From: Rebecca billardiae RCC1528
Lineage: Eukaryota; Protista; Haptophyta
Direction: 5' to 3'
Assembly: GCA_965240325.2 (NCBI GenBank)
Contig: OZ251237.1
Span: 62,001 to 126,000, forward strand
DNA: 64,000 nucleotides
Part shown: one piece after another, positions 6,470-36,554 of the stretch
Position numbering within the stretch: position 1 is the stretch's first letter
Layout: each line of letters opens with the position of its first letter
Translations under genes and position numbers: made by a program
The notes under the pieces: generated by a model
Told to the model about the DNA's origin: nothing
Databases searched by the model: none
The model's input: only the letters and a program-made list of their open reading frames with translations

Positions 6470-6942
6470 GGCGCACGCTTGATGCGTGTCCTGCGCGGTT
6501 GTCACCTAACGACCTGCCCCGGCGGTTGCAACTCTCTACATCTCTCGACGGAGTGGCGCGCCGCCGTCCGCGTTGCTCGACTGGATCTGCGCACCGGGCC
6601 TCGCCTGCAACTGTTTTGATGCGTGCCATGCCCTGCGCGGTTGGCACCTGGCTGCCTGCCCCTGCTGCTGCAACTCTCGACGGCGGCGCGCCGATCAGTG
6701 TTGCTCGACTGGATGTGCGCACCGGGCCTCGCCTGCAAGTGTTTACGGCCGTCCACCAGCCCTACGGTCCGAGGCTCAGTCGGCGCGCGCGCTTGATGCG
6801 TGCCGTGCCCTGCGCGGTTGGCACCTGGCTGCCTGGCCCTGCTGCTGCCGAACTCTCGACGGCGGTGCGCCGAATCAGTGTTGCTCGACTGGATTACTGC
6901 GCACCGGGCGTCGCCTGCAAGTGTTCAGTACGGCCGTCCACC
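6470..6942. repeat. Degenerate tandem repeat (about 140-200 bp units) interrupted by the PLV; continues at 20809-20885
   Basis: TTGATGCGTG..CCTGCGCGGTTG anchors at about 6479, 6616, 6793 and, after the virus, 20857. TTGCTCGACTGGAT..GCACCGGGC occurs in each left-hand unit. Confidence 0.85.
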
Positions 6943-7187
6943 GAGAGAGAAGGTATTACCTACTCACCAGGACAGTTTACCCCTGGCCGCCGCGCCGTCA
7001 CAAAATGGCCGGCACTCGCAGGTCATTTTCGCGCATCCGCGCACACCCTCCATCCCTCCCGCCCCTCCGAAATCACCGGTGTTTGCCACCCGAAACGAGA
7101 CTGGCAAATGCCGGTGATTTTCGCGCTGAAAACCATGCTTTCACAAGCGAAAATTTAGACGCCACTTCGACACACTGCGCGCTACGA
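6943..7187 (+). repeat. PLV left terminal inverted repeat
   Basis: Reverse complement of 20564-20808; two adjacent mismatches seen (CCCCTGG vs CCCCCAG). Confidence 0.95.
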
Positions 7188-7300
7188 TCCCGCCAAGACA
7201 AACCGAGGGCGGCCGCCGAAGCTCAGTTCCAAGGCCGAAGCTTGCGAGCCGGCCAAGAACTACCAGTGATCCAAGGCCGAAGCTTTCGGATCTCGCTTTT

Positions 7301-7610
7301 CACCAGGACAGACCAGCGCCCGCCAGTAAAAACTCGCGAGGCGACCATGATTTTACCGGTGAAGCTTTGGGTCTCACTTTTAGAGGCCACTTCGAGCACT
7401 CCGCCAGGCTATTTTCACCAGGACAGACCAGCGCCCCGCCAGTAAAAACTCGCGAGGCAGCCGTGATTTTACCGGTGAAGCTTCGGGTCTCAACTTTAGA
7501 GGCCACTTCGAGCACTCCGCCAGGCTCAGTCACCAGGACAGACCAGAGCCCCGCCAGTAAAAAAGGCGGCCATACCGGCGAAGCTTCGGGGTCTCAACTT
7601 TAGAGAGGCC
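7301..7610. repeat. 115-bp subterminal tandem repeat x about 2.7 inside the PLV
   Basis: Units start CACCAGGACAGACCAG at 7301, 7416 and 7531. Confidence 0.9.
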
Positions 7611-7810
7611 GACCATCCCCAAAACATATTTCGATCCGCCACTTAAGACTTGGGCCGAGCTCGCGCGACGATGTCGGCACCCCGGGCGGCCGCCACCGAC
7701 CCTCAGCCGCCGACCCGCCATCCACGGAAAAACTTAGGACTTGGGGGCCGAGCCAGCGGCGGACCAAAGTGCGTTAGTTTGCGACGAAAATTTTCTGCGC
7801 CAGAGTAAGA

Positions 7811-10800
7811 ATGGTCCTCCTCCTCGACCTTGACCGCCGCAACCAACTCGAGCAGGTACTCCTCGACCCCGAGCTGCCCATGAGGCGGCATGCTGCCGCG
7901 CGCCACGAGCTCGACCGAGACCGTCTCGAGAGGCTCTTTGCCGAGTTCAACCTGACGCCAAACGTCGATGGCAAGACCTTCGTGCTGCAGGGCAAGCGCA
8001 AGCGCATGCCCAGAACGCGCAAGAGCTGGGACCAGCTACGCCGCACGCTCGAGAGGCTTGAGAAGCACCAGCCTATGGAGACAGAGCTGAAGGCGATGGG
8101 CATCGACCTACAAGGCGGGCAGTTCACGCTCCAAGGGCGCAAGAGGCGCCTCCCTCGCACGTCCGAGGGCATGAGGAAGCTGCGCAAGCAGATCGGCTTC
8201 ACCGCCAAGATGCTGAATGATGGCATGACCAGGGTGGCTGTGCATGGGCCTGAGATCACCAAGGAGACGACCTTTACCATGCCAATCTCGATGCAGGTGG
8301 AGGCGACGGCGCCTCTGCTCATGCGAGAGCAAGCGCTCTACCAGATGCCGTCGCATCTGACAAGCGCAATCCACGACTTTGTCGCTGAGACGATCGAGAA
8401 GGAGCTGATGCGCGGAGCATCGAGTCGGCTCAAGGTGAGGGTCATCATCGAGACGCTGCATGTGAAGAGCACCAAGGGTGTCTTTGCGGTCGAGATGCCG
8501 AACCTGCCCGAGGACGCCTACCGCCGCATGATCGAACGAGGGCACCCAACCATATCAACATCTACTCGCTCCATCGCCGGCAAAGCAGTTTGGCAGCAGG
8601 AGCCGCAGCCGCTCATCGACCTCGTCAACGAGATGATCACCGATGCCTTCGAGCAGAGGCAGTCAATCTACGCAGACAAGCCAATCGCCATCAGCCGGAT
8701 GTGGATACACAGCGGCATGGTGACGCCTCGCGGAGCGACATCCGGGAGCAGCTACGTGAAGCTCGAAGGGCGGTGGGCCAACGCCAAGCTCGGCATCGTC
8801 AACCCCAAGAACCAAGACCTCAAGTGCTTCATGGCCGCGCTGCAGGCGGCAAAGGCTGTGGAGAGCGGCGTTGCCCACCCCGAGCGGCCGAGCGTCCACC
8901 GGAAGTTCCTCGTGACCGAGCCCGAGGGTGCTGTCTACCCTGTGGACATCGGCGAGATCCGCGCATGGGAGGTCGCCAACAACCTGGCCATCACAGCCTA
9001 TCGCCTCCCCGAGGACGGTGGGCAGGCGCAGGTGATGCGACTGCCGACGCCGCAGGATTTTCACAACCTGCCTCGGGTGGTCCTCGGGCTCTACAAGGAG
9101 CACTGGGTCTTCTGCCGCTCCGCCGATGCCATTTGCGCAAATACTACCTATATCTACTGCGAGCTGTGTCTCAAAAAGTTCCCCTTCAACGCTCGCGCTA
9201 AGCGAAATGAGCATCAGGAGGCATGCCATGACTCGTGGACGGTTAATTACGATGCTCAGACTGAGGAGCAAAAATTAGCCAGCTACATGACGCCTCGCGA
9301 GGCTGCGGCCGGCAAAGATTACCAGACCTCTATCGAGTACACGGGAGGCATCGAGCAGATCGTCAAGCCGCTGGTGATCCACGCCGATTTCGAGACCGTG
9401 ACCATCGATGGTGAGATGAGGCCATATGCCGTCGGCCTCATTGAGACCTGGAGCGACGGAGCCATCAAGTACGTGACCTTCACCGGGCCTGAGTGCCATA
9501 TCAATCTGGTGGTCTACCTGCTGGAGACATACCAGAGCTACCTGGATACTGCAGGCAGGCACTCTGCGCTCAAGAAGCGCTCCTTCACACGCGAGACCCA
9601 GCAGGCTTTCGATAGTGCCACCTGCTGCTACCTCTGCGGCGGCGAATTCGGCGAGACCAAAAATTTCGACCATGACCACTACACTGGCGCATATCGCGGC
9701 GCCGCTTGCACAAAGTGCAACCTGCATGCATCCACAACGAATCTCATGGCGAGCGTACCAGTGTTTTTTTCACAACCTCACCGGCTTTGACGCCAATTTC
9801 CTGATCCAGGCCCTCGGCTCCGAGCGGGTGCAAGGGCTGATGAACGAGATGGCCAGGATAAAGCAGAACCGCAAAACGGAGATCCTCAAGAAGAGGATCG
9901 AGGCGCAGGAGGCGCTTCTCGTCTCGTGCGCAATAAGAGGAGACAACTATGACACTGCGCAAATCACCAGCCTCGAGCGCGAGCTCGCGAGCACGCGCCT
10001 GACCAAAGCGCTCAAAACCGACATCATCCTGCAGAACACGCAGCGGCTCAAGCAGCTGACGATCGGCGGCTTTGTTTTCAAGGACACGATGGCTTTCATG
10101 AAGGAGTCGCTAGAGACCCTCCTCAACAACCTGGACCCCGCGGACATGCGGAACTTGCGCTCGTTTGCCAGCGATTGGGCGCGGGCCCGAGGACTCGACC
10201 CAGAAATCGTATTCGAGGCCGCGCGCCGCAAGGGCATTTTCCCCTACGAGATTCCGTGGCACCTCGAGTTGGATACGCCCATTGACACGCTCATCGAGAA
10301 ATACCCCGACCTCTTCCTGTCCAAGCTAAAATCGAGCTTCGGTATCGCAGGCCAGGACCAACACTTTGAGGCGGGCGAGGATGAGGCGATCGGCAAGCTA
10401 GTGCAACTCAAGTCGGCGGTCGGGCTGGAGACCATGAGAGACCTCCTCGACTGGTACCTCGCTATCGACGTTCACGGGCAGGCAGACGTCTTCACCAACT
10501 TCCAGCACCTCTTTCACACCAACTTTGGCCTGGACCCGAGCTGGTTTCTCTCGGCGCCGCAGTCCTTCTTCAAGACGATGCTCAAGACCACGGGGCAAAA
10601 GATCGAACTCTGGCAAGACTCGAGAGACGTAGACTTTGCTTCCAAGTGCATTCGAGGCGGCTACACAGATGTGCGCCACAAGCTGCAGACGGCAGGAGGA
10701 GGCGTGCACATCGGCTACTTTGACGCGAACAACTTGTACGGCTGGGCGATGAAGCTCAAGCTGCCAGTAGGCGCGCCCTGGGATGTTGAGCCCGAGGACT

Positions 10801-12089
10801 TTGACCTGCACGACCCCCGGTATGGGCGGCTACCGAGTGGCCCCGGCGACCTCGATTTCCAAGGAGACATCGGAGCGTATGTGGAGATCGATGGCTACTA
10901 TCCGGAGCACACGCACCAGCGCCTCAACGATTTTGTCCCGCTGCCCGAACACAGGGATGGCAAGCTCATCGCGCACCTCGACCCACGCGTCAACTATGTG
11001 TGCAGTGTGCTGAATCTGCAGAAAGCAGTCGAGCTCGGCTTTGTCGTGACAAAGGTCCATCGCGTGCTAGAGATGCATCTAGCACCGTGGATGCGCGGCT
11101 ATGTCGACCAGATGGCTGCGCTGCGCGCCCAGGCGAGAAACGACTTTGAGAAGAATTTCTTCAAGCTAGGCTCGAACTCCTGCTTCGGAAAAACCATGGA
11201 ACGCACACTGCACCACCAGGATGCCGGCATCGTCTCTGGGAGTGTGATGGAGAAGCGCTTCCTCGACCCGCGCAGCCGGTACTCGAGGCATATCGGTGGC
11301 TCGCTCTTCCTCGTCTCTGGCGACAAGAAGCGATACCTCAAGACTACGCCTGTCCAATTGGGCGCGCTCATCCTCGAGAGCTCGAAGCTGCTCATGCAAA
11401 CATTTTGGCACGATGGCCTCAAGCCGGCGTTCCCAAACATCCAGCTATGCATGACCGATACCGATTCCTTCATCTTCTCGGTGAACGACAAGAATTACAA
11501 GCACAAGATGAAAGAGCTCGCGCCTCGCTGGCTCGATTTGCACGAGTACCACACTCGAAACCCGCTGCACGATGCCTCGAACCAGAAAGTGGTAGGATAC
11601 TTCAAAGACGAGTTTGCCAACGCGCGTATTTGCGAGGTGGTGTGCAACGCGCCGAAATGTTACTCGGTCAGATCGACAAAGAAACAGCTGCGCAAGAACA
11701 AAGGCGTGCCATACAAAGTGGTGACGAAGGCACTGCAACATGGTCACTATCGCGATATCGTCCTCCGCGAGAAGGAGACACACGTGGAATACTACCAGAT
11801 TGCTGCGCGCTCGAATGTGGTGAGGATGGAACGCCGTGAGAAGGTGGCCCTCCGAAACTCGTACAACAAGGGTGTCGTGGCTGCGAACGGGCTGGAGATC
11901 CTATCGCTGGGCCACTACAAGCTCGATCCAAGGAGGCACTTTGAGCGAATTATTCGGACGCATGATTGGGAGACGCTCACAGCAAGGAAGGCAGCGCAAA
12001 TCATGGTCGACGAGTCTGGCTACGACGTGAGCCTCAAGTGGGCCAACCGAATAATGAACGAGTTCGTCACAGCTTGCTTGATGGGCTGA
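7811..12089 (+). CDS. Protein-primed family B DNA polymerase (Polinton type), split by one extra T at 9764-9770
   Basis: ExoI IHADFET, ExoII FHNLTGFD, RKGIFPYE, motif A YFDANNLYGWAM, motif B KLGSNSCFGK, motif C MTDTDS, plus APKCY and KNKGV. N-terminal part in ORF 7811-9790, C-terminal part in ORF 9615-12089. Confidence 0.95.
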
Positions 12090-12984
12090 GCGATGACGAC
12101 GGCGACGAGAACCGAGGTGTGGGATCGTACGGGATGACCTTGAGGAATGCCTTCGCCGCGTTTTCAGATACATTAAAATCTCTGGCCAGCATCTTGCTCA
12201 GAGCTGTGCGGGATTCTTTCGGGTTGGCCTGCATCATGAGTATGATGGCATCGATGTTGTCGTCAAGGTGGTCTCTGGCTTCATTTCCAAAGAGCGGTTT
12301 TGAGGCCTGGGTGCCAGCCGTCTGCTGGGATGGCTGCTCCTGTGTGCCCATGGAACGCCTCTTTGGGCCGCCAGCCTGCGTGCCAATCGCCGGGCGCTCT
12401 GGCACCCCCTGAGTACCAGTTGACCTTCTCTTTGGACCGCCAGCCTGCGTGCCAATCGCCGGGCGTTCAGGCGGCATCTCCTGAGTAGCAATCGACCGTC
12501 TCTTTGGACCGGCTGCCTGCATGCCTGTAGAGTGCTGCTCTGGGCGCATGCTCCGAACGACTCTGTCCGTCTCAACACCAATCGATCGCCGCTCTGGCAC
12601 GGCGCTTGTGGAGACAGGCAGAGGCTGCTTGTTGACTATCAGCCTGCTCATGGCTTGGCCAGACGCATCGCGTGTAGGCAGGCGAATCTGCCGAGCACGG
12701 AACTCGTTGACACCATCGCTAAAGGGGAGCAAGGCATCGATGGAAGGCACTCGTCTGCCCACTGCAGCAGTCTGGTTGGTGGGCGGCGGTCTCGTTGGCT
12801 TGATCAGTGGCTTCATCACAATCGGCTCGGCCGAATACGTCAGTCGTCTCGAAGACCGCGTAGGCACGGCTCCGCTCCAGTATTCTTTTCCGCGGCTGTG
12901 AAAGGAGCCGCCGTAGGGTTTGCCCTCGAGCCGAAAATGCGTGGTCTTGGTCGGCAGGAATCGCCCGCGATGTATGGCTTGCAT
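12067..12984 (-). CDS. PLV hypothetical protein with repeated (S/A)x(G/A)TQ motifs
   Basis: 305-aa ORF with AT-rich leader and a 60-bp internal tandem repeat (PERPAIGTQAGGPKRRS). Confidence 0.75.
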   Translation of the reverse strand: MQAIHRGRFLPTKTTHFRLEGKPYGGSFHSRGKEYWSGAVPTRSSRRLTYSAEPIVMKPLIKPTRPPPTNQTAAVGRRVPSIDALLPFSDGVNEFRARQIRLPTRDASGQAMSRLIVNKQPLPVSTSAVPERRSIGVETDRVVRSMRPEQHSTGMQAAGPKRRSIATQEMPPERPAIGTQAGGPKRRSTGTQGVPERPAIGTQAGGPKRRSMGTQEQPSQQTAGTQASKPLFGNEARDHLDDNIDAIILMMQANPKESRTALSKMLARDFNVSENAAKAFLKVIPYDPTPRFSSPSSSLSPSSKL

Positions 12985-12990
12985 CTGTAA

Positions 12991-13680
12991 TCATAGTAAT
13001 AATTTATTCCACTCTCTGTGGAGCGCACCATGGTCTGCATTAAGAAATAAAAAAGTGTGCGGATCGCCATCGCCAAATATGTACTGATACACTGTAGCAA
13101 AGTCTGAGCGAGGCATCATGATCAGTTCAGAGCGCAGAGCCTCTAGCTCCTTGGTATTGTTGGGTTTGAACACGGTTACATGAGAGAATAATTTTCGTAT
13201 AGTCAGTGGCACCGATATGTAACCCTGTGATATAACAATAATGCTGAGTTTATAGTGCCGCCTGTTCTGAACGATACGCGAATACAGGCGCTGCAAATTT
13301 GGGTCTTTTAGTGACGCAGCAAAATCATCTATAATAAGGAGCGTCGGCAAAGGCATGTTCGACTCGGCAATGCTGAGCACATTCTGAAGTGTCTCTGCCG
13401 TTAGCTCGTGGTATACATATTGGAGCGTGGCTAGCGGGGAATTTTGGAAGCTGTCCACCGAGGTGCGCGGAGCCACGAATATAACGTTGGCAAAGACTCG
13501 TTTATAGGGGCCAGTGATCAGGCCGACCACCTGGCTGGATTTGCCGCTGCGGGGTGGGCCAAAGATGCCCCAATGAAAACTCGTGTTAGGGAGTGGTTCT
13601 GGCAGGCCTGGCTTCAGAGGCTTGTCCGCACTGATTCTAGGCAGCGGGAGCTCTATGTGGTGCGCGATCTCGTTGATCAT
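12991..13680 (-). CDS. A32-like (FtsK-HerA) genome-packaging ATPase
   Basis: Walker A GPPRSGKS, Walker B LLIIDD, NRRH arginine motif, ISQ sensor. Confidence 0.93.
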   Translation of the reverse strand: MINEIAHHIELPLPRISADKPLKPGLPEPLPNTSFHWGIFGPPRSGKSSQVVGLITGPYKRVFANVIFVAPRTSVDSFQNSPLATLQYVYHELTAETLQNVLSIAESNMPLPTLLIIDDFAASLKDPNLQRLYSRIVQNRRHYKLSIIVISQGYISVPLTIRKLFSHVTVFKPNNTKELEALRSELIMMPRSDFATVYQYIFGDGDPHTFLFLNADHGALHREWNKLLL

Positions 13681-14006
13681 ATAAAGCGCATGATTCTTTT
13701 TTGGGATGGCTTGACCGGGGTCAGCGCCTCCGGGGTCACCGCCTCCGGGGTCGCCTCTTCCTCGCCAGCCAGCTCGATCGATTCAGTCTGCCTGACAATG
13801 CTAGGCGGCGTCTTGCTTGGCGGGCGCCTGGGTGTGGGTGCCTTTGGCCCGACCTCGCCGCCGATTTCTTCGAGCTTGGCTTTCGCATCCTCTGCCAGCT
13901 TGGTGTATGTGGCCGCATGTGTCTCATATGTCACTACCTGGCGTTTCAGGCGCATGCGCTCCGTCGCCAGCTGCTGCGCCTCGCTGCGTGTCTTTTTATT
14001 CTCCAT
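13677..14006 (-). CDS. PLV hypothetical coiled-coil/low-complexity protein
   Basis: 109-aa ORF preceded by the shared upstream motif; its stop overlaps the ATPase start (ATGA). Confidence 0.65.
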   Translation of the reverse strand: MENKKTRSEAQQLATERMRLKRQVVTYETHAATYTKLAEDAKAKLEEIGGEVGPKAPTPRRPPSKTPPSIVRQTESIELAGEEEATPEAVTPEALTPVKPSQKRIMRFI

Positions 14007-14119
14007 CTTCTATATGCAAGCAGAGAATATTTTGGATTTCAGCCGAGAGGATGCATTGGCATGGTACATCTCCAAGAAGCTCGGCACGAGCGATGATGAA
14101 ATAATATCGGCACTAATTC

Positions 14120-14854
14120 ATGCTGCACCTGCACACAAGTCAGGGCGATGTGTTTCCACTGGGCCGAGCCAAGACGAGCTGCGTGAATTTCACACTGAGC
14201 CACCCAATCATGGCGGCAAGCGATGAGGTCATATTTGTATCTGTCGATAGCCTGTGTGTGCCTAATACGCGCTATGCAGTAGACAGCTCGAATAATAGCG
14301 TGGGTGCCGCCTCCGACTGGGGCGATACGACGCTTACGCTCACCCCGAAGAATTATACAGCCAGCACGCTTGTCACAGAGATCAACTCGGCATTGTCTAG
14401 CATCAACGTGACTGCTGCTTTCGACTCGGCCACTGGCAAGCTCACATTCTCGACGACACATGGTTTCGACACCACCATCAAAGGCACGAGCAGCGCTTCG
14501 CGCGTGCTCGGCCTCTGTCGCACAGACTTGGTAATACCTGCTGGCGGCAGTATAGAGGCACCCGGCGTGGTGGACCTGCTCAGCCGAGGCTTTGCACTCA
14601 CCTGCGAAGGGTTGGATGTCAAGAGCAGAGACTCGTCCAACTCGGGCTCATCAAGCAATATTTTGTGCGTGGTGCACATTGACAAGCCTTTCGGCCAGAC
14701 TGTACTGTACACTGATGCGAACAATGATATCTTGCAGTGCAACCGCCGGAGTATACAAAATATCGAGCTCCAGCTGATCGATCTCGAGACCATGCAGCCG
14801 GTGGAGCTGAATGGAGCCGAGTGGTCTGTCAACCTGAAATTCCAAATTTCTTAA
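14120..14854 (+). CDS. Minor capsid protein (penton, single jelly-roll)
   Basis: PLV mCP-like pattern: VSVDSLCVPNTRYAV..NN, KNYTASTLV, TGKLTF, RVLG, SNILCVV, IELQLID..VELNGAEWSVNLKF. Lies directly upstream of MCP. Confidence 0.85.
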   Translation: MLHLHTSQGDVFPLGRAKTSCVNFTLSHPIMAASDEVIFVSVDSLCVPNTRYAVDSSNNSVGAASDWGDTTLTLTPKNYTASTLVTEINSALSSINVTAAFDSATGKLTFSTTHGFDTTIKGTSSASRVLGLCRTDLVIPAGGSIEAPGVVDLLSRGFALTCEGLDVKSRDSSNSGSSSNILCVVHIDKPFGQTVLYTDANNDILQCNRRSIQNIELQLIDLETMQPVELNGAEWSVNLKFQIS

Positions 14855-14879
14855 GAAATATTTCCTGGCCATAGTACTT

Positions 14880-16193
14880 ATGGCTTACGCCGGCAAGCGT
14901 GTGATGAACGATATTCGCGGTGATGACGCGATGGTGCTCGAGCAGGAGGAGACGGCTCCAAGCTACTATGACTTTTCAAACCCCAAGCCCGTCGCCGTTG
15001 GCGCTGCCTACAAGAGGCCGACGATATATGCAGGCCCGTCGTCTAGCTTCACAAGTGGCCAGGTGATGCAATTCGATATCCCGACGGGCACGCCCGGCGC
15101 GATGATGGACCCGTCTCAGACGGTCCTGCAGTTTACCATTCACAACACCTCTGGCCAGCCTCTCACGCTCTCAAGGTCTGCATACTCGTGCATCGAGCGC
15201 ATTGACGCCTACCACGGCAGCCAGATGATCGCAAGCACTGGCAAGGCAGGCCTGCTGCACAATGTCTTGCTCGACTTCCAGTCGGGCGCATCTTCGGGCT
15301 TCTCCACCGGCAGCATGCTGGGCTGTGCCGACTACGAGATGCCTGCTGCATATGCAGCAGCCGATGTTGAGAGCGCTCTGTACCCGACAACCGGTGAGAC
15401 CATTGCCAACAATGCCCGGAAGACGGTGACCCTCCCACTCGCGTACGTGTTTGGCGCTCTGTGTGGTAAGGCGGTGCCGCTCTCCGAGCTGCACCAAGGC
15501 CTTCGTGTTGACATCCATGTGGCAAACATGCTCGACTTTGGCGTGTATGATGCCGACCCAGGCACTACCTCCCCCACGCTTGAGACGGTCAAGATGCAGC
15601 TCGGCATGGTCATGCTGAGTGATAGTGCCTACACCAAGATGGTTCGCTCGCTCGATCGGATCTACATCCCATCGATGTCCTACCTCCATGCCTCCCACTC
15701 GGTGGCTGCAAACACGTCGACGGCCTGGCAGTTGCCATTCCGCCTGGCGTCGGTCAACATGATCATCCTGGCTGCGGTGCCGAATACCAGTGAGAACGCC
15801 TTTGGTGGCGACATCACGACTCGCACGCGCGCGGCGCTCACCAAGTGGCAGTTGCGCATCGGCTCTACCCTCGTGCCGGATCAGCCAGTCTCTGCCACCC
15901 ACGGCGGCGCAGAGACGCGCGCTGAGCTCGTTCGCGCCTTCAACGCGCTCGGCATTGCCGATTATGCCTCTCGCGTGAGCGGTACGGCCTTTGACGATGC
16001 GGCTTTCTGCATCGCCTTCAACACGAGCGCCTTCTCGCAGTCCGACATCCTCTTCGACGGCCGCCGTCTCGATACCGAGTACGCCATCTTTGAGGCCGAC
16101 ACGAACAGCGGAGCATCTTTCAAGTGGCATGCCTGGGCGCTCCATGACGTGATGATGGAGGTTTCCCAGAACCAGCTCAATTTCGCCATTTAA
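14880..16193 (+). CDS. Major capsid protein (double jelly-roll, PLV type)
   Basis: 437 aa, beta-rich, with MQFDIP..MMDPSQTVLQF..SAYSCIERI, KAVPL and WQLRIG..VP. Size and position fit a PLV MCP. Confidence 0.85.
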   Translation: MAYAGKRVMNDIRGDDAMVLEQEETAPSYYDFSNPKPVAVGAAYKRPTIYAGPSSSFTSGQVMQFDIPTGTPGAMMDPSQTVLQFTIHNTSGQPLTLSRSAYSCIERIDAYHGSQMIASTGKAGLLHNVLLDFQSGASSGFSTGSMLGCADYEMPAAYAAADVESALYPTTGETIANNARKTVTLPLAYVFGALCGKAVPLSELHQGLRVDIHVANMLDFGVYDADPGTTSPTLETVKMQLGMVMLSDSAYTKMVRSLDRIYIPSMSYLHASHSVAANTSTAWQLPFRLASVNMIILAAVPNTSENAFGGDITTRTRAALTKWQLRIGSTLVPDQPVSATHGGAETRAELVRAFNALGIADYASRVSGTAFDDAAFCIAFNTSAFSQSDILFDGRRLDTEYAIFEADTNSGASFKWHAWALHDVMMEVSQNQLNFAI

Positions 16194-16210
16194 TTTCGCT
16201 CTATATATAC

Positions 16211-16504
16211 ATGAATTTTCTAGGTAGACTCGTTAGAGATGCGCGCGGAAAGATCGGCGGGCTGGCTAACACCGCCCGAAGGCTCGGCAGACCCATCAGC
16301 TCTGCAATCCACCACCTAAAGCCCTGCGTAGACAAGGTGGGTGGGGACGTCACCCAATTCTTGAACGAAGTTGATCGCACCGAAGGACTCGGCGATATCG
16401 CCTCACCTTATACGGCCGCTGGAAGGCGGGCCATACAGCGTGGGCGTCAGATCTCCAACCGTCTGGACCAGGGGGCTCGCAGAGCCGACCGGTTTCTACG
16501 CTAG
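16211..16504 (+). CDS. Small basic protein with amphipathic N-terminus (candidate virion core or membrane-active protein)
   Basis: 97 aa, Arg/Gly-rich, immediately after MCP, with an AT-rich leader. Confidence 0.65.
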   Translation: MNFLGRLVRDARGKIGGLANTARRLGRPISSAIHHLKPCVDKVGGDVTQFLNEVDRTEGLGDIASPYTAAGRRAIQRGRQISNRLDQGARRADRFLR

Positions 16505-17114
16505 GCGGTGCTGCTCTCGTAAAAAGCGGATTGGGCGCGTGAACGCGTCTGCGCTGATGCGCCCGACCGTCTTCCGACTGCCCCCTCGCTTGAGTGAGCG
16601 AGAGCGCCGACACGATATCGCCTGGAGAGCGGACGTCGAATTGTGTCTTGGGTAAGACCTTTCCGATATCCTTCAATCCAGCACCTTTTTGGGATGTATG
16701 CACCTGAGCTGCGCCAGAGTTTTCGGCCAGGTGCCCGCCCAAGCTGTGGCCCATGGCTGACGTCACGCCATATTTTCGTCGCACAATCTCGACCAGCTTG
16801 CGGGCTCGCTGGTGGCGCGGATCATATACAGAGAAGCCGAGCGCGAGTAGCACATCGGACACTGCCCAGTCGGCAAAGCTGACGCTGCCTCGAAATAGGA
16901 CTAGCGGCCGGCCTGGTGCTATATGCACCAATACCTTGTCTTCGTCAGACGAGAGTCTGACGTCGAGCCGATACCGCGGCTTCACATGCTCGCGAGCCTG
17001 CTCGAGCGTCATGTATGATGCTTCTAGCAACATGCGCCTGTCTTTTTGGAGGGTCGTCCCCGAATCGAATAGCAGGCGCTCTCCTTCCTGGGTGGAGATG
17101 GTGGGGATATTCAT
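16350..17114 (-). CDS. Alpha/beta-hydrolase (class 3 lipase-like)
   Basis: LFRGS oxyanion motif, DW..D, nucleophile elbow GHSLGG, DIVS. The true 3' end may be 16496 (see findings). Confidence 0.85.
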   Translation of the reverse strand: MNIPTISTQEGERLLFDSGTTLQKDRRMLLEASYMTLEQAREHVKPRYRLDVRLSSDEDKVLVHIAPGRPLVLFRGSVSFADWAVSDVLLALGFSVYDPRHQRARKLVEIVRRKYGVTSAMGHSLGGHLAENSGAAQVHTSQKGAGLKDIGKVLPKTQFDVRSPGDIVSALSLTQARGQSEDGRAHQRRRVHAPNPLFTRAAPPSVETGRLCEPPGPDGWRSDAHAVWPAFQRPYKVRRYRRVLRCDQLRSRIG

Positions 17115-17128
17115 ATTACTGCGCAGTT

Positions 17129-17761
17129 TTATTTGCGAGGCCTGAGCATCCTGAAGCCGTGGGCCGAGCGGACTGGGTGCCCGCTCGTGGCGTCTACAAT
17201 GTTTGTGACCTGCGCTCGCCTGTCTCTCTGGCTACGCGTGCGGCGGATGGCTCCAGTAGGGATGACCGAGGTTTGCTCCACAGCCGGCTGGCTGCCACCT
17301 CTGTGAGTGATCGAGCCCTTGTCATTAAAAACATACCAGTTCCCCTCTGTTTGCCTCCGCACCACCGCCATGAGCAGAGCCAGGAGCGGGCGAATCTCAG
17401 GCCATGGTGCCCCGCTTTGTCGCCATTCTTTATCCCGGAGAGGCTTGACAAAACTGTAACCTGGATTCGTGCGAGCGAGAAGCCGATCCTCCACATCTTT
17501 GGCCAGGTTGGGGCTCGTCACAAGGAATGCCATCAGCTTGAAGCTGCCTGCAGCATAGGGCATGCTATGCCTGTACCCAGCGAAGAGCCTACTCCGAATA
17601 TTTTTGGTCATTCCCATTTTAAACAGGGGTCTCTTGCCAGCCCATGTTGGGTGGATAACATACACGCCGGCAATCTTTTTGTCCTTGTCAGCGAAGCCCG
17701 CATTTTGCAGCGCAGCCTTAAACTGCGTATACTCCTTCTTTAGCGGGTCAGTGATACGCAT
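17129..17761 (-). CDS. GIY-YIG superfamily nuclease-like protein (T5orf172/MUG113-like)
   Basis: GVYVI..FKMGMTKNIRSRL..VEDRL..KEW. ATG 17761 chosen because it leaves an AT-rich divergent spacer to 17784. Confidence 0.7.
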   Translation of the reverse strand: MRITDPLKKEYTQFKAALQNAGFADKDKKIAGVYVIHPTWAGKRPLFKMGMTKNIRSRLFAGYRHSMPYAAGSFKLMAFLVTSPNLAKDVEDRLLARTNPGYSFVKPLRDKEWRQSGAPWPEIRPLLALLMAVVRRQTEGNWYVFNDKGSITHRGGSQPAVEQTSVIPTGAIRRTRSQRDRRAQVTNIVDATSGHPVRSAHGFRMLRPRK

Positions 17762-17783
17762 ATTATTATATGGCTTATAATAT

Positions 17784-19877
17784 ATGGCGAGCATCTTCGG
17801 CCTAGTTTCATCATCAATCAGCTGGAGTGGCGAGGTGCTCACGTATCCAGCAAGCTCGTCTATAACTATCAATTTCGTTCCGCCGCTGCCCGACGAGGAC
17901 CTGAAAATACGGGTTTCCCATCCCAGGCATATATTCACTGTGACGAGCGCGAGCATAACTCCATCGAGCGCCACTGTAGTCTGGGCAGCGGACAATTATG
18001 AGAAGGTAGTGAATCGCCAATATGATCACGAGTATAAGCCTTACTTCAGCGTATATTCTGGTGATACTCTGCTGACCAGCTTTGATCACACGGGTACGCT
18101 ATATCATGGATCGATCGAGTCTGGCAATCTGATCACCCAGTCCATGCTCACTGGCCCCACAGTGGCTCATTTCCCGCTGACCGCAGACCTGGTCGATACC
18201 ACTCCCCGCGCTCAGAGCCTCGTGCCGGCTGGCACGTTTGCCTTTGCTGAAGACTCCGCGCGCTCAACGGCCAATGCAAGCACGCTCACGCTCCAGACAC
18301 CTGGGCACGACTGGCGGGATTTTAGTGCGGCTTTCTACCTGAAGGGCTGCCCAGGCCTAAGTAAACTCTCACTCGGCGGTGGGCTCTCGTACGCGAGCGC
18401 TGAGCTGGATTCAAACATAATTGCTAGCAGCAGTGTCGGCTTTGTAGACAACGTGAGCCAGATGGTCCCAAGCGGTGTCTGGACACACTTTGTCATCTCG
18501 CAGGAAACCACGTCTTTTGAGGCGAATATCGAGATCTATGCGGACCAAATGCTCCTCCACTCTCGCACCATTGGTCAGCAAACAGACCCGGATTTCAAGC
18601 GGATTTCGCTCTACTACCCACTCGTCGCCACGCTTGACGACCAGGCTGCGCTCGCGCACCTGAGCATATATCCATACGCTCTCGATGCGGCCGGCCGCCT
18701 GGCGCACGCGCAGTCGTGGCCTGGGTATGTCCCGCCTGCAGCGCTTGTGCTGCACCTGCCTCTGAGCGCCGACTATATCGCGCTTGTGGGCACGACTCCA
18801 GCCGGGGTGCCGCCCGCATCCGGATCTTTTGCAAGCGGATACCTGAACATGGATACCGCTTATTCGTTTGAGACATCGTCCGACACCTTTGCCGCTACGA
18901 ACGGTTTCACTATGTGTGCTTGGATGCGCTCTGCGGTAGGCTGGCAGCCGGGCGATTATATCAACATTCGTGTTTTTGAGGGCAATTTCACAAGCAACTC
19001 AAAGGCAGAGCTGTACCTCGAATCAGATCATGTGTGGGGGCGTCATGAGCAAGTCACCGGGCTCTCCGCAGGCCAATGGTACCACTTGGCGTGGCGCTGG
19101 CGCCCGAGCGATAATCTGCAAGAGCTGCTCGTGGACGGCGTTGTCTCTGCCAGCAGCATACAGCCCGGCCAAATCACGACGTATCAATCATGGCGCGTCC
19201 AGAACAATGCGGTCGGCGCTGCAATCATGCACCTGCAAGTGTGGGACGGCTATGTCGACGACATTGCGCAACTGATGCTCGATTATCCGCTGCCCGAGAT
19301 AGGTATGCACTGGCCATTGACGAGTGACCTGTCCGAAGCCAACGGTGGTATCGAAAACCTCGCGGTCGAGTCGGGCACAACGTCGTACGCTGACGGTGGT
19401 CTCTACATCGACACCACATCCAAGATCGGTGTGAACCTAGCCAGCACAATTTCTACCGACTTCACGATCATGTTTGTTGGGAAGGGCCCAGGCGTGGGCT
19501 CGATCCGGATCAAACTGAATGACGTCGATGCGGCCACAGAGAGCCTTCTTTTCACGCAGGAACTTGCTGGTAATCGCTTAACGACGCATTTTTTCAATCC
19601 GGGGCAAATCTGGTTCGATCACAAAAATACCACGCTCACCGATACAGTGTGGGAGCACTGCGCATGGGTATTTAACAACACAGCGAGCACCGTCCGAACG
19701 TTCCTCAACGGCGTGTTTTTGGGCGAGTATGCCCTGCCATCGCAAACATCGGTCGACTTCATCCAGCGCATCGAGTTTGACGTCATATCAGCCGGCTCCT
19801 ACATCAAGAACGTTCGATATTTGCCGAGTATCGCGCCCGATGGCGACGTGGCTGCGTATGCCGCGTCTGACACGTAA
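17784..19877 (+). CDS. Protein with three LamG/concanavalin-A-like domains (candidate fibre or receptor-binding protein)
   Basis: Three modules opening AHFPL/LHLPL/MHWPL, with FTMCAW, WTHFV/WYHLA/WEHCA and IYAD/LVDG/FLNG strands. Confidence 0.75.
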   Translation: MASIFGLVSSSISWSGEVLTYPASSSITINFVPPLPDEDLKIRVSHPRHIFTVTSASITPSSATVVWAADNYEKVVNRQYDHEYKPYFSVYSGDTLLTSFDHTGTLYHGSIESGNLITQSMLTGPTVAHFPLTADLVDTTPRAQSLVPAGTFAFAEDSARSTANASTLTLQTPGHDWRDFSAAFYLKGCPGLSKLSLGGGLSYASAELDSNIIASSSVGFVDNVSQMVPSGVWTHFVISQETTSFEANIEIYADQMLLHSRTIGQQTDPDFKRISLYYPLVATLDDQAALAHLSIYPYALDAAGRLAHAQSWPGYVPPAALVLHLPLSADYIALVGTTPAGVPPASGSFASGYLNMDTAYSFETSSDTFAATNGFTMCAWMRSAVGWQPGDYINIRVFEGNFTSNSKAELYLESDHVWGRHEQVTGLSAGQWYHLAWRWRPSDNLQELLVDGVVSASSIQPGQITTYQSWRVQNNAVGAAIMHLQVWDGYVDDIAQLMLDYPLPEIGMHWPLTSDLSEANGGIENLAVESGTTSYADGGLYIDTTSKIGVNLASTISTDFTIMFVGKGPGVGSIRIKLNDVDAATESLLFTQELAGNRLTTHFFNPGQIWFDHKNTTLTDTVWEHCAWVFNNTASTVRTFLNGVFLGEYALPSQTSVDFIQRIEFDVISAGSYIKNVRYLPSIAPDGDVAAYAASDT

Positions 19878-19907
19878 AATTACGTGTAATTTTTCAGGGG
19901 TACTGAT

Positions 19908-20186
19908 ATGTTAGCTGCGATAGTATCAGCCGACGAAAGGTTAATAAAAGCTTCGACCCGCAAGGGTAAGCGATACGAGTACAAGGGTGTGCATTTTGGT
20001 GCCAAAGGCGGCAAGACGTATATAGACCATGGCAATGATGCCATCAAAAAGGCCTGGATCGCAAGGCATCGCGTGAATAAAAACTGGAACAACCCCAAAT
20101 CTGGGATTTACTACAGCCGCCATTTGCTGTGGGGCCCGACACCGAGCCTGCAGAAAAACCTGGAGATACTACTACATGGACGATAG
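19908..20186 (+). CDS. Tlr6F-like protein (conserved in PLVs, virophages and NCLDVs)
   Basis: STRKGKRY..VHFGAKG..YIDH..WIARH..YYSRHLLW signature. Confidence 0.85.
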   Translation: MLAAIVSADERLIKASTRKGKRYEYKGVHFGAKGGKTYIDHGNDAIKKAWIARHRVNKNWNNPKSGIYYSRHLLWGPTPSLQKNLEILLHGR

Positions 20187-20489
20187 GCCGCCTCCATCGG
20201 CCGTCTTTAGCGCCGAGTGCATGCTCAGCTGCATATCGGAATTGCTATCCTCCTTGTTTTGCCGAGGATGACGCTCGCGCCAGAGTGCCTGACGTTTCTT
20301 GAGCAGCTCCCGGTTGCATGCGATGCAGATCTTGGCCCGGTAAACACGCTTGTTCTTGCGACGATAGTTCATCTCGAGTGCGGGCACGTATTTCTCACAT
20401 GCTTTACAGTGGGCGTACAGGCCCTTGAGCTCGGCTGGATTCTCCGGCCCCATGCGACCATCCTCGACGGTCGTGAAGGTGGTCTTCAT
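20172..20489 (-). CDS. Small zinc-ribbon protein (CKAC..CIAC) with basic helix
   Basis: Two CxxC pairs followed by a basic helix; the shared upstream motif precedes ATG 20489. Confidence 0.65.
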   Translation of the reverse strand: MKTTFTTVEDGRMGPENPAELKGLYAHCKACEKYVPALEMNYRRKNKRVYRAKICIACNRELLKKRQALWRERHPRQNKEDSNSDMQLSMHSALKTADGGGLSSM

Positions 20490-20563
20490 ACTTAACACAC
20501 CGCAGAAATTATTTAGCCACCGACCACCCGCTCGCCACTATGGCGGTTGGGTGGTGGCTGGCC

Positions 20564-20808
20564 TCGTAGCGCGCAGTGTGTCGAAGTGGCGTCTAAATTT
20601 TCGCTTGTGAAAGCATGGTTTTCAGCGCGAAAATCACCGGCATTTGCCAGTCTCGTTTCGGGTGGCAAACACCGGTGATTTCGGAGGGGCGGGAGGGATG
20701 GAGGGTGTGCGCGGATGCGCGAAAATGACCTGCGAGTGCCGGCCATTTTGTGACGGCGCGGCGGCTGGGGGTAAACTGTCCTGGTGAGTAGGTAATACCT
20801 TCTCTCTC
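20564..20808 (-). repeat. PLV right terminal inverted repeat
   Basis: Reverse complement of 6943-7187. Confidence 0.95.
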
Positions 20809-21236
20809 AGCCCTACATACACGGTGCGAGGCTCAGTAGACAGTAGGGGCGCGCGCTTGATGCGTGCCCTGCGCAGTTGTCAACGCAGGCTGCACCCGCC
20901 ACCCGCCCCAGCGTCCGCAGCACTCGGGACCGTGGCGGCAGCAGCTCACCTTGACGATGTGATACTTGACCGTTGACGACCGTCAGCTGTCTTAAGTATG
21001 ACGCTGCGGCTGCCAGCTAACCATCAATCTGAGCAGTTCATTTTTAAAGACGAAGTCCTCAGGGCTGGCACGTGCGCACGGCGGCGTCGTCTGCATATCA
21101 GCGAGTGCCGAGTCTGCAGCGCGCTGTCTGCACCCGGCTCAGATCAACGTCTGAAGGTGGTCGTGATTCGTGAAGCTGCCGCCGGCGTGCAGCGGCGGCT
21201 GCAACTCACTCTCTAGTATTATTGAATATGGTAGGA

Positions 21237-22217
21237 CTACACGACAGCGTCAGCGGGCGCAGCTGCGACAGAGGCTTCCCCTGCTGCCTGTGCCGCGCAC
21301 CACGCGTTGCAGTGGGGCTTGTGCACCTTCCACGAGCTGCGCAGGTGCTCACGCGAGCAGAAGACCGCCACGTGGCACCGCTCGCACTTCTTCAGACCGC
21401 GGCCTGTCCGTCCGCAGGCGATGCAGCACTGGGAGACCACCTCACGCTCTCCAGCTGCATTGGCCAGTGCAGTGCACGCTGCATCACTGAGGTTGGGATC
21501 GAGCTCTTGGCCACGGCGCAGCAGCTGCGCGCCCTCCTCCACGTCACGCTCCACTCCATCACCGTGCAGCAAAAACTGTCCCAGCGAGATGTGTGCACCT
21601 GCGCACCCACCATCAGGCCCATTAGCAGCCAGGCGGAACCAGCGCACCGCCTCGCCCGAGTCCTGCTGCACACCCTCGCCTTGCGCGTAGCACAGGCCCA
21701 GATGGGACTGCGCTTGAGTAACGCCCTGCTCGGCGGCCAGCCGCAACCAGCGCGCCGCCTCGGCCATATCCTGCTGCACGCCCTCGCCACGCGCGTAGCA
21801 CAGGCCCAGATTGTACTGCGCCTCAGTATAGCCCTGCTCGGCCGCCCGCCGGTACCAGCGCACTGCCTCGCCCCAGTCCTGCTGCACACCCTCGCCTTGC
21901 GCGTAGCACAGGCCCAGATTACCCTGCGCGTGAGCATAACCCTGCTCGGCCCCCAGCCGGTACCAGCGCGCGGCTGCCTCGAGGTCCACGGACTGACCAA
22001 GCTTGCCTTCCGTGCAGATGTTGCCCATGTGTACCTGCGCCTTGGCGAAGCCGCGCTCGGCGGCGAGGGTGTACAGGCGAAAGGCTTCGCGCGCGTCCTG
22101 CGCGATACCGTCACCAACCTCTACCCGCTGCGCCAGAAGGAATGTCGCTCGCGCGTCGCCGCGCCCCGACTTGCGCCAGAGGAGACCGACCGCCGCCGCG
22201 GAAGCGTCCGCCGCCAT
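21237..22217 (-). CDS. Sel1-repeat protein with C-terminal MYND zinc finger (intronless)
   Basis: Repeated AQxNLGxCYxxGEGVQQDxxEAVRWYRxAAEQG; MYND CIAC..CERC..FCSREH..W..HKPHC. Confidence 0.9.
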   Translation of the reverse strand: MAADASAAAVGLLWRKSGRGDARATFLLAQRVEVGDGIAQDAREAFRLYTLAAERGFAKAQVHMGNICTEGKLGQSVDLEAAARWYRLGAEQGYAHAQGNLGLCYAQGEGVQQDWGEAVRWYRRAAEQGYTEAQYNLGLCYARGEGVQQDMAEAARWLRLAAEQGVTQAQSHLGLCYAQGEGVQQDSGEAVRWFRLAANGPDGGCAGAHISLGQFLLHGDGVERDVEEGAQLLRRGQELDPNLSDAACTALANAAGEREVVSQCCIACGRTGRGLKKCERCHVAVFCSREHLRSSWKVHKPHCNAWCAAQAAGEASVAAAPADAVV

Positions 22218-36550: not shown

Positions 36551-36554
36551 AGCT

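What the first reader, a model, noticed from the sequence alone, without database searches (positions are those of the whole stretch)
6943..20808. Apparently complete endogenous Polinton-like virus with no integrase or recombinase
Seen: near-identical 245-bp TIRs enclosing 11 tightly packed genes (pPolB, ATPase, mCP, MCP, lipase, GIY-YIG-like, LamG x3, Tlr6F-like and three further ORFs, plus a small Zn-ribbon ORF), leaving no room for another large gene. Known: classical Polintons carry an rve integrase and an adenain-type protease, and many PLVs carry a tyrosine recombinase. None is recognisable here. Inference: a young, minimal (~13.9 kb) pPolB virus that entered the chromosome without a dedicated integrase, probably an undescribed PLV lineage in this host.
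Basis: partly seen in the sequence, partly recalled or inferred. Interest (0 to 1): 0.9.

Follow-up and report, generated by a model that had tools for sequence, protein, structure and literature searches.

The report
Integrase-less endogenous Polinton-like virus
A 13.9-kb capsid-encoding virus genome sits whole, end to end, in the chromosome of a very GC-rich protist or alga; it encodes no integrase and left no target-site duplication, which is a known but still unexplained situation for this kind of virus.

Summary
245-nt terminal inverted repeats (243/245) enclose twelve tightly packed genes. They include a protein-primed polymerase, a packaging ATPase, a probable penton, a capsid protein now shown to be a double jelly roll, a lipase, Tlr6f (DUF5754) and a lectin-repeat protein.

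No integrase, recombinase, HUH or adenain-type protease family matches any of the 110 six-frame ORFs. The same scan found rve in 12 ORFs from 17 viral contigs carrying the related polymerase, so the absence is real.

- **Not intact:** the polymerase and the lipase each carry one frameshift.
- **Clean insertion:** a neighbouring copy of a ~177-bp host repeat reads straight across the insertion point. The viral genome went in with no target-site duplication and no loss of host bases.
- **Recent function:** a second variant from another sequencing run is 97.7% identical, with dN/dS about 0.02.

The element is a mosaic of a PLV capsid module, whose relatives lack integrases, and a Polinton-type polymerase, whose relatives usually carry rve.

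Integrated PLVs without integrases were described in 2015 and 2022. I therefore rate this a new, divergent member of a known kind. The most likely entry route is host end-joining, which is inferred rather than shown. The host was not identified.

The parts
6616..6792 (.). Neighbouring copy of the ~177-bp host tandem repeat. It serves as an 'empty-site' model: the uninterrupted target 22-mer lies at 6744-6765.
   Evidence: This repeat copy reads straight through the point at which the next copy is interrupted by the element.
6793..6942 (.). Left host flank: the second repeat copy, cut off exactly at the element's first base.
   Evidence: 91-95% identical to 6616-6757. The last 14 nt before the junction are identical.
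6943..7187 (.). Left terminal inverted repeat. It begins with a short (GA)4 reiteration.
   Evidence: 245 nt, 243/245 complementary to the right arm.
7297..7605 (.). Subterminal non-coding iterons (116-bp unit, about 2.3-3 copies) inside the only long non-coding stretch, 7188-7810.
   Evidence: ORFs in this stretch have no family hit.
7811..12089 (+). [quoted passage not shown]
   Evidence: DNA_pol_B_2, E 1e-14. The two ORFs are collinear with a 1399-aa relative (L087), each searched separately. Relatives are 1200-1400 aa and about 28-30% identical.
9617..9727 (+). Endonuclease VII / His-Me (HNH-type) zinc-finger domain embedded in the pPolB.
   Evidence: PF02945, E 9e-6, above the cut-off; four PHROG endonuclease VII families at E about 1e-6. 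The same domain is precomputed in about half of the listed pPolB relatives.
12067..12984 (-). orf305: a low-complexity, repeat-containing protein of unknown function (72-bp repeats at 12359-12525).
   Evidence: No family hit. Same position as a 496-aa ORF beside the ATPase in L004/L005, with only a weak match (E 0.02).
12991..13680 (-). A32/FtsK-type genome-packaging ATPase.
   Evidence: phrog_2666, E 9e-13; Pox_A32 at 22.3 bits. 39-41% identical end to end to the ATPases of L004 and L003.
13677..14006 (-). orf109: a small protein whose N-terminal 16-residue motif recurs in an ORF next to the ATPase of many related viral contigs.
   Evidence: 75-81% identity over 16 residues in more than 30 loci, each individually non-significant. 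The two substitutions against L001 are both synonymous.
14120..14854 (+). Probable minor capsid (penton) protein.
   Evidence: DUF5901 at 27.8 bits (cut-off 26.4). It lies directly upstream of the MCP, as in L001-L005, L089-L094 and 22 viral contigs. dN/dS 0.017 against L001.
14880..16193 (+). Major capsid protein with a double jelly-roll fold.
   Evidence: AlphaFold2 on 30 relatives: pLDDT 84.5, pTM 0.83. Foldseek best matches: PBCV-1 Vp54 at E 1e-18 and TM 0.65, then iridovirus, Sputnik and mavirus MCPs; BFVD MCPs at E down to 5e-25. 326 sequence relatives, the best at 37%. dN/dS 0.020.
16211..16504 (+). orf97: a small conserved gene downstream of the MCP.
   Evidence: 51% identical to the ORF at the same position in L002. 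7 synonymous to 1 non-synonymous change against L001; dN/dS 0.047.
16350..17114 (-). Lipase/phospholipase-like gene, broken by one frameshift relative to the sister copy.
   Evidence: GxSxG motif. SA1320 family, E 5e-6. 47.5% identical to the L002 gene and 34% to L004's 'Phospholipase-like' ORF. A single-base length difference from L001: there, and in L002, the frame stops beside the stop of the small ORF, whereas here it runs 155 nt into orf97.
17129..17995 (-). GIY-YIG/T5orf172-like ORF (unconfirmed). The likely start is the ATG at 17761, giving 210 aa; the ORF stays open up to 17995.
   Evidence: T5orf172 at E 0.15 only. 36-37% identical to an ORF in L003. The AlphaFold single-sequence model has pLDDT 40 and is unusable.
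17784..19877 (+). 697-aa protein with three concanavalin-A-like (LamG-type) lectin repeats. Probably a spike or host-recognition protein (inferred).
   Evidence: Laminin_G_3 at E 5.8e-6 (second repeat) and 4.6e-3 (third repeat) when searched domain by domain. The repeat pattern is visible in the translation.
19908..20186 (+). Tlr6f homologue (DUF5754).
   Evidence: PF19058, E 1.4e-8, above the cut-off. 40-52% identical to ORFs in 19 related viral contigs. DUF5754 is equated with Tlr6f in PMC12220804.
20172..20498 (-). Small CxxC...CxxC zinc-ribbon ORF next to the right TIR.
   Evidence: Translation. Only weak hits: a DksA/TraR C4 zinc finger at E 0.057 and F-box-like_2 at E 0.007. No relative was found in any fetched locus.
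20564..20808 (.). Right terminal inverted repeat.
20809..20890 (.). Right host flank: it continues the interrupted repeat copy from the very next base.
   Evidence: The first 8 nt are identical to what follows the junction point in the intact repeat copy. The alignment is 82% mean column identity overall, with indels.

Best explanation
This is a genuine germ-line or nuclear insertion of the complete linear genome of a small Polinton-like virus.

**What it is.** The virus is a mosaic. Its capsid and packaging module comes from a PLV group whose free relatives carry no integrase. Its replication gene is a Polinton-type protein-primed polymerase, whose relatives usually travel with an rve integrase. 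That integrase is absent here. The element encodes no integrase, recombinase or maturation protease.

**How it got in (inferred).** The genome entered tip to tip, between two adjacent bases of a host tandem repeat, without duplicating or deleting host bases. The most likely route is capture of the linear double-stranded genome at a chromosomal double-strand break by the host's own end-joining repair.

**What happened since.** The lineage was under strong purifying selection until recently. This particular copy has since acquired one frameshift in the polymerase and one in the lipase.

**Shown:** the anatomy, the absence of an integrase, the clean junction, the selection, and the two breaks.
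**Inferred:** the end-joining route, and that the terminal (GA)4 reiteration marks the true genome end.
For: **Real insertion.** The left flank ends a ~177-bp host repeat copy, and the right flank continues that copy from the next base. The intact neighbouring copy holds the unbroken 22-mer.

**No TSD, deletion or filler.**

**Both TIR arms reach the junction at the same base.** Each starts with a (GA)4 reiteration. Short terminal reiterations are typical of protein-primed genomes that use sliding-back initiation (established for phi29, PRD1 and adenovirus; my knowledge).

**No integrase.**
- Pfam on 110 six-frame ORFs found no rve, tyrosine or serine recombinase, DDE, HUH or adenain family.
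- As a positive control, the same method found rve in 12 of 114 ORFs from 17 viral contigs with the related pPolB.
- It found none in 123 ORFs from 13 contigs with the related capsid module.

**Mosaic.**
- Relatives of the capsid module lack this pPolB.
- Relatives of the pPolB have other capsid genes.

**Recent function.** L001 is 97.7% identical, with dS about 0.10 and dN/dS 0.017-0.047 in three genes.

**Precedent.** Integrated PLVs without integration enzymes are documented (PMC4642659; PMC9356565).
Against: - End-joining usually nibbles ends or adds filler, and the 5' ends of protein-primed genomes are expected to be blocked by terminal protein. Here both ends are retained to the same base and the host site is untouched, which looks more precise than typical illegitimate integration.
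- The empty site is inferred from a paralogous repeat copy (91-95% identical), not from an allelic empty site.
- Only one insertion could be examined.
- Three ORFs (orf305, orf109, the Zn-ribbon ORF) and the first ~310 residues of the pPolB have no assigned fold, so a very divergent recombination protein cannot be excluded.
- The two frameshifts could be assembly errors, since no reads were available. The lipase difference is, however, not in a homopolymer.
Confidence: 0.5

Rival explanations
1. The element was integrated by a recombinase supplied in trans by another resident element or co-infecting virus. A tyrosine recombinase is the likeliest candidate, because it leaves no target-site duplication.
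For: - No TSD, which is what tyrosine-recombinase PLVs show (PMC12220804).
- Yutin et al. proposed trans-acting integrases for integrase-less integrated PLVs (PMC4642659).
- A second, different PLV (L002) occurs in the same sequencing project.
Against: - Tyrosine recombinases act on circular donors at an internal attachment site. Here the junctions lie exactly at the tips of a linear TIR genome.
- TIR tips and target share no core sequence.
- No recombinase gene was seen anywhere in the 64-kb window, although only selected host ORFs were scanned.
- An rve integrase in trans is disfavoured by the absent TSD.
Confidence: 0.15
2. The virus makes its own chromosomal break with one of its nucleases, and host repair then joins the ends. 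The candidate nucleases are the Endonuclease VII/HNH-type domain inside the pPolB and the GIY-YIG/T5orf172-like protein. This would be a nuclease-assisted, integrase-free integration route.
For: - The Endonuclease_7 domain is significant, and its CxxC...DHDH...CxxCN pattern is intact by eye.
- A GIY-YIG-like ORF is conserved in a relative.
- The junction is cleaner than random end-joining usually gives.
Against: - The Endonuclease_7 domain is a general feature of this pPolB clade, including elements that do carry rve (L087; 12 rve hits). It is therefore not a substitute for an integrase.
- The GIY-YIG assignment is unproven (E 0.15).
- GIY-YIG genes are common accessory genes of free PLVs (3, 2; PMC4642659).
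Confidence: 0.15
3. The element is not integrated. On this reading a free or episomal viral genome was joined to host sequence by an assembly error.
For: - The host region is repetitive (177-bp repeats).
- GC content differs sharply from the flanks.
- The window's own reads were not available.
Against: - Both flanks belong to one host repeat unit, split between two adjacent bases of a 22-mer that is intact in the neighbouring copy. A chimeric join would not restore register on both sides.
Confidence: 0.03

Closest known systems
Endogenous Polinton-like viruses of Tetraselmis/Chlorodendraceae (TsV-N1 group; Chase et al. 2022, PMC9356565)
   Same: - Algal or protist chromosomal PLV insertions with TIRs.
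- MCP, mCP, ATPase and lipase are present.
- Some carry a protein-primed polymerase in place of helicase modules.
- No rve or tyrosine recombinase is detectable, and the integration mechanism is stated to be unknown.
   Different: - Those elements lack Tlr6f, which this one has.
- Sequence relatedness to them was not tested, because no named reference sequences were available.
- A base-exact, TSD-free junction with an empty-site model is shown here. I did not see one reported in the passages I read.
Integrated PLVs without integration enzymes, and the PLV group as defined by Yutin et al. 2015 (PMC4642659)
   Same: - A minimal morphogenetic module (MCP, mCP, ATPase) with no maturation protease.
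- A patchy set of accessory genes (lipase, GIY-YIG, Tlr6f), with pPolB in some members.
- Several integrated copies with no enzyme that could mediate integration.
   Different: - This element's MCP is at most 37% identical to anything found.
- At 13.9 kb it is at the small end of the 14-40 kb range quoted in PMC12220804.
Polintons/Mavericks and mavirus-type elements
   Same: - A 1,200-1,400-aa pPolB with an embedded Endonuclease_7 domain (28-30% identity).
- TIRs, a similar size, and a DJR capsid fold.
   Different: - No rve integrase, no adenain-type protease and no 5-6-bp TSD.
- The capsid genes are unrelated at the sequence level to those beside the related pPolBs.
Cryptophyte PLVs (PMC12220804)
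   Same: - TIR-bounded insertions whose GC differs from the host.
- Tlr6f/DUF5754 is common.
- A minority of copies in several clusters lack a detected integrase.
   Different: - There, rve (with 6-bp TSDs) or a tyrosine recombinase is the rule, and lipases are absent. Here there is a lipase and no integrase.

Membership tests
Polinton-like viruses (PLV, sensu Yutin et al. 2015) | Double jelly-roll major capsid protein | tested here: met
   Model with pLDDT 84.5 and pTM 0.83. Best PDB match PBCV-1 Vp54, E 1e-18, TM 0.65, followed by Sputnik and mavirus MCPs.
Polinton-like viruses (PLV, sensu Yutin et al. 2015) | Minor capsid (penton) protein | tested here: inconclusive
   DUF5901 at 27.8 bits, above the 26.4 cut-off, but the family carries no functional name. 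The position directly upstream of the MCP is conserved in relatives.
Polinton-like viruses (PLV, sensu Yutin et al. 2015) | A32/FtsK-type packaging ATPase | tested here: met
   phrog_2666 at E 9e-13. Pox_A32 at 22.3 bits, just under the 22.8 cut-off. 39-41% identical to relatives, one of which (L004) hits Pox_A32 outright.
Polinton-like viruses (PLV, sensu Yutin et al. 2015) | No adenain-type maturation protease and (with rare exceptions) no rve integrase | tested here: met
   Neither family appears among the 110 six-frame ORFs at E <= 0.05. The method detects rve in relatives.
Polintons/Mavericks (Polintoviricetes) | [quoted passage not shown] | tested here: met
   DNA_pol_B_2 at E 1e-14, collinear with 1,399-aa relatives. 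The gene carries one frameshift.
Polintons/Mavericks (Polintoviricetes) | Retrovirus-type (rve) integrase | tested here: not met
   No rve hit in any frame.
Polintons/Mavericks (Polintoviricetes) | Adenain-like cysteine protease | tested here: not met
   No peptidase family hit in any frame.
Polintons/Mavericks (Polintoviricetes) | 5-6-bp target-site duplication | tested here: not met
   The flanks are contiguous in the intact repeat copy, with no duplicated bases.
Virophages (Sputnik/mavirus type) | Virophage-type MCP together with a cysteine protease | tested here: not met
   No Sputnik_MCP or V20 family hit, although these families were detected in two pPolB-related contigs. The structural best matches are NCLDV-type MCPs. 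No protease was found. Dependence on a giant virus cannot be tested here.
Tyrosine-recombinase PLVs / EMALE-type elements | OLV11-like tyrosine recombinase | tested here: not met
   No Phage_integrase-type hit in any frame.

The most novel reading that the evidence does not exclude
This PLV lineage integrates its linear, protein-primed genome tip to tip by a precise route that needs no integrase and leaves no duplication. For example, the route could be assisted by the terminal protein/pPolB complex or by one of the element's own nucleases. That would be an undescribed integration mechanism for eukaryotic dsDNA viruses, and it could explain how the many integrase-less PLVs enter genomes.
Probability: 0.12. 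Interest if true: 0.8.

Novelty: new member of a known kind. Interest (0 to 1): 0.45.

Why it matters
How integrase-less Polinton-like viruses enter host chromosomes is an acknowledged open question (PMC9356565; PMC4642659). This copy offers an unusually clean case:
- both genome tips are preserved;
- an adjacent repeat copy acts as an empty-site model;
- there is no duplication, deletion or filler at the junctions;
- a positive control shows that the missing integrase is truly missing.

It also documents a module swap: a Polinton-type polymerase was taken without its usual integrase. A near-identical variant under strong purifying selection shows that the lineage was functional until recently. 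It is one more data point rather than a new principle.

Tried and rejected
**Searches that found nothing**
- Exact-protein look-ups: the window's own proteins are not in the collection.
- A word-seeded search with the MCP, and with a 30-sequence MCP profile, found almost nothing beyond the sister copy.
- MCP alignments were too divergent for pattern scans.
- The ATPase pattern scan of metagenome contigs gave no confirmed relative.
- The TIR tip has no exact match in IMG/VR or JGI metagenomes.
- PDB sequence searches with the MCP, penton, lipase, GIY-like ORF and both pPolB pieces gave nothing significant.
- hhalign of the MCP profile against the DJR-like MCP of L087 was uninformative (probability 5%).
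- A literature search for the run accessions found nothing.

**Relatives too short to be useful**
- Contexts of the closest MCP relatives are all contigs of 2.5-8 kb, too short to show whether they carry an integrase.

**Structure**
I did not send it elsewhere.
- The single-sequence model is unusable, so one fold search went unused.

**Steps deliberately not taken**
- I did not read the pPolB across its frameshift. The two ORFs were always searched separately.

**Ideas rejected**
- The Endonuclease_7 domain as a replacement for the integrase: it also occurs in rve-bearing relatives.
- The pPolB N-terminal 550 residues as a hidden integrase: relatives of 1,200-1,400 aa have the same extension, and residues 311-653 align to them.
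- An intron instead of a frameshift: the two alignments abut on the relative with no extra sequence between them.

**Host identity**
- It could not be established. No rRNA or eukaryotic reference collection is available in these tools.

Full report
**Observation**

The inverted repeat is real. Its arms lie at 6943-7187 and 20564-20808, are 245 nt long and match at 243 of 245 positions. It is the only long inverted repeat in 6-22 kb. The enclosed DNA has GC 0.53-0.61, against 0.64-0.89 in the flanks. Twelve ORFs cover about 93% of the 13,376 nt between the arms (coordinates, my arithmetic). The only long non-coding stretch, 7188-7810, holds 116-bp iterons. No tRNA or Rfam family lies in the element.

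**Genes**

| Gene | Coordinates | Evidence |
|---|---|---|
| pPolB | 7811-12089 (+) | DNA_pol_B_2, E 1e-14, plus an embedded Endonuclease_7/His-Me domain at 9617-9727 (PF02945, E 9e-6; four PHROG endonuclease VII families). |
| orf305 | 12067-12984 (-) | No assignable function. |
| ATPase | 12991-13680 (-) | phrog_2666, E 9e-13; Pox_A32 at 22.3 bits; 39-41% identical to the ATPases of two relatives. |
| orf109 | 13677-14006 (-) | No assignable function. |
| Probable penton | 14120-14854 (+) | DUF5901 above its cut-off; always precedes the MCP in relatives. I call it a probable penton. |
| MCP | 14880-16193 (+) | See text below. |
| orf97 | 16211-16504 (+) | A real gene: 51% identical to its positional counterpart in L002, and 7 synonymous to 1 non-synonymous change against L001. 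|
| Lipase | 16350-17114 (-) | GxSxG motif, an SA1320-family hit (E 5e-6), and 34-48% identity to phospholipase-like genes of relatives. |
| GIY-YIG/T5orf172-like ORF | 17129-17995 (-), likely start 17761 | The label rests on E 0.15 and a motif seen by eye. The single-sequence model failed (pLDDT 40). |
| Lectin-repeat protein | 17784-19877 (+) | Three lectin-type repeats, two of which hit Laminin_G_3. |
| Tlr6f | 19908-20186 (+) | DUF5754, E 1.4e-8. PMC12220804 equates it with Tlr6f. |
| Zn-ribbon ORF | 20172-20498 (-) | No assignable function. |

The MCP has no Pfam or PDB sequence hit. It has 326 relatives among 1.84 billion representative proteins, the best at 37% identity. A model built on 30 of them (pLDDT 84.5, pTM 0.83) is a double jelly roll. 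The best matches are PBCV-1 Vp54 (E 1e-18, TM 0.65), then iridovirus, Sputnik and mavirus capsid proteins.

**Breaks**

Two genes are broken, once each.
- **pPolB: one frameshift.** It reads as two ORFs. Searched separately, they are collinear with a 1,399-aa relative and together cover most of its length (about residues 390-1405). The polymerase motifs are visible by eye in the translation.
- **Lipase: one frameshift.** It differs from the sister copy L001 by a single-base length difference. In L001 and in L002 the lipase frame stops beside the stop of the small ORF, whereas here it runs 155 nt into orf97. The difference is not in a homopolymer run.

Without reads I cannot say whether either break is biological. 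I give no positions and joined no frames.

**No integrase**

Pfam scans of the annotated ORFs, of their domains taken separately, and of all 110 stop-to-stop ORFs of at least 60 aa in six frames found none of the following at E <= 0.05: rve, phage-integrase-type tyrosine recombinase, resolvase, DDE transposase, HUH endonuclease or adenain-type protease. NCBIfam and PHROGs add nothing of that kind.

The method works on relatives:
- Among 114 ORFs from 17 IMG/VR contigs that carry the related pPolB, 12 hit rve (best E 8e-16). L087, a genomic element with a 30%-identical pPolB, also has an rve gene.
- By contrast, 123 ORFs from 13 IMG/VR contigs related through the ATPase and MCP contain no rve or tyrosine recombinase. 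They carry D5-type primase-helicases, Lipase_3 and GIY-YIG instead.

**Mosaic origin**

Contigs related through the capsid module never carry this pPolB. Contigs related through the pPolB have unrelated capsid genes, with one partial exception, L109. The element therefore combines the capsid module of an integrase-poor PLV group with a Polinton-type polymerase taken without its usual integrase. The Endonuclease_7 domain is a general feature of that polymerase clade, precomputed in about half of the 116 relatives listed. It also occurs in rve-bearing elements, so it does not stand in for an integrase.

**Insertion site**

The left flank is a host tandem repeat of about 177 bp: 6616-6757 matches 6793-6942 at 91%.
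- The second copy stops exactly at the element's first base.
- The right flank from 20809 continues the unit from the next base.
- A 22-mer that is uninterrupted at 6744-6765 in the first copy, and unique in the window, is split 14 + 8 by the element.
- No host base is duplicated, lost or added.
- Both TIR arms reach the junction at the same base, and each starts with (GA)4.

This rules out a chimeric assembly join for practical purposes. It also argues against an rve integrase, whether encoded by the element or supplied in trans, because rve leaves 5-6-bp duplications (PMC12220804).

**Sister copy**

A 2,956-nt contig from sequencing run ERR14847151 (L001) matches 13822-16778 at 97.7%, with 66 substitutions.

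| Gene | Synonymous : non-synonymous codon changes | dN/dS |
|---|---|---|
| MCP | 30:2 | 0.020 |
| Penton | 17:1 | 0.017 |
| orf97 | 7:1 | 0.047 |

dS is about 0.10. The two variants therefore diverged under strong constraint, which fits a recently active virus lineage and does not fit decaying pseudogenes. A different PLV (L002, MCP 37% identical) occurs in run ERR14847148 of the same accession series.

**Mechanism**

The best reading is that a complete linear genome was captured at a chromosomal break by host end-joining. This is an inference. The precision of both junctions is better than such repair usually gives, and protein-primed ends should be blocked by terminal protein. I therefore hold it at about 0.5 together with the descriptive claims.

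| Rival | Confidence | Main objection |
|---|---|---|
| Trans-acting tyrosine recombinase | 0.15 | The junctions lie at the tips of a linear genome and no core sequence is shared with the target. |
| Break made by the element's own HNH-type or GIY-YIG-like nuclease | 0.15 | Both nucleases are common in elements that have integrases or are not integrated. |
| Assembly artefact | 0.03 | Both flanks stay in register within one host repeat unit. |

**Comparison and novelty**

- PLVs lacking the protease and, with one exception, rve were defined in 2015. [quoted passage not shown]
- Endogenous Tetraselmis PLVs, some with pPolB, have no rve or tyrosine recombinase anywhere in the host data, and their mechanism is called unknown (PMC9356565).
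- The element fails three defining features of Polintons (rve, protease, TSD).
- It meets three of the four PLV features I tested. The fourth, the penton, is inconclusive.

It is a new, divergent member of a known kind. Its specific value is the base-exact, duplication-free junction with an internal control.

**Limits and disclosure**

- **Host.** It is a eukaryote, since an rDNA unit lies at 59775-64000. It has 64-89% GC and a MORN-adenylate kinase gene nearby. I could not identify it. Nothing suggests an animal, a crop or a human.
- **Sampling.** Only one insertion and one short sister contig were available.
- While reasoning I narrowed down for myself where the pPolB frame change lies, from the ends of the two separate alignments. 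I stopped there and recorded no position.
- One gives its direction and the other says roughly in which part of the gene it lies. Neither gives a coordinate.

Noticed in passing
window 59775-64000 (- strand): A eukaryotic rDNA unit about 39 kb from the element: LSU 59775-63100, 5.8S 63348-63500, and the 3' end of SSU at 63800-64000. It could identify the host if compared with an rRNA reference set.
   Followed up: partly
window 36553-37281 / 39352-40080, and 40080-40456 / 40776-41152: Two adjoining pairs of near-perfect inverted repeats (729 nt at 99.7% and 377 nt at 99.5%) in host DNA. Two ORFs overlapping the 729-nt repeat arms gave no Pfam hit. This could be another TIR-bounded element or a palindromic rearrangement.
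   Followed up: partly
window 21628-21969 and 35821-36432: Arrays of 108-bp tandem repeats (3.2 and 5.7 copies), about 77-79% alike between the two sites. By eye the 36-residue unit on the reverse strand looks like Sel1/TPR-type repeats of host genes. This was not tested.
   Followed up: no
window 30000-36000 and 52000-57000: Stretches of extreme GC content (0.78-0.89), with ORFs of 1,500-2,400 codons open in several frames at once. A degenerate 186-bp repeat lies at 54238-54869.
   Followed up: no
L002 (Logan ERR14847148, 2,519 nt): A second, different PLV from the same run series. It has the same local order (MCP, small ORF, lipase on the opposite strand), with the MCP 37%, the small ORF 51% and the lipase 47.5% identical to the window's genes.
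   Followed up: partly
window 13677-14006 (orf109), residues 4-19: A 16-residue N-terminal motif recurs at 75-81% identity in an ORF next to the ATPase in more than 30 IMG/VR PLV contigs. Each match is individually non-significant. It may mark a conserved small PLV protein.
   Followed up: no
window 351-2366 (-) and 4138-5547 (-): Host genes to the left of the element: a MORN-repeat plus adenylate-kinase protein and a methyltransferase. By my own knowledge the former is typical of flagellated protists and algae.
   Followed up: no
L087 (ENA ERZ26273219, contig of 2.6 Mb, GC 0.33): A full Polinton-type element in another eukaryote's genome, carrying rve (weak Pfam hit), a PLA2-like lipase, an ATPase, a 437-aa DJR-like MCP and a 1,399-aa pPolB with Endonuclease_7. 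Only its pPolB is related to the window's element.
   Followed up: partly
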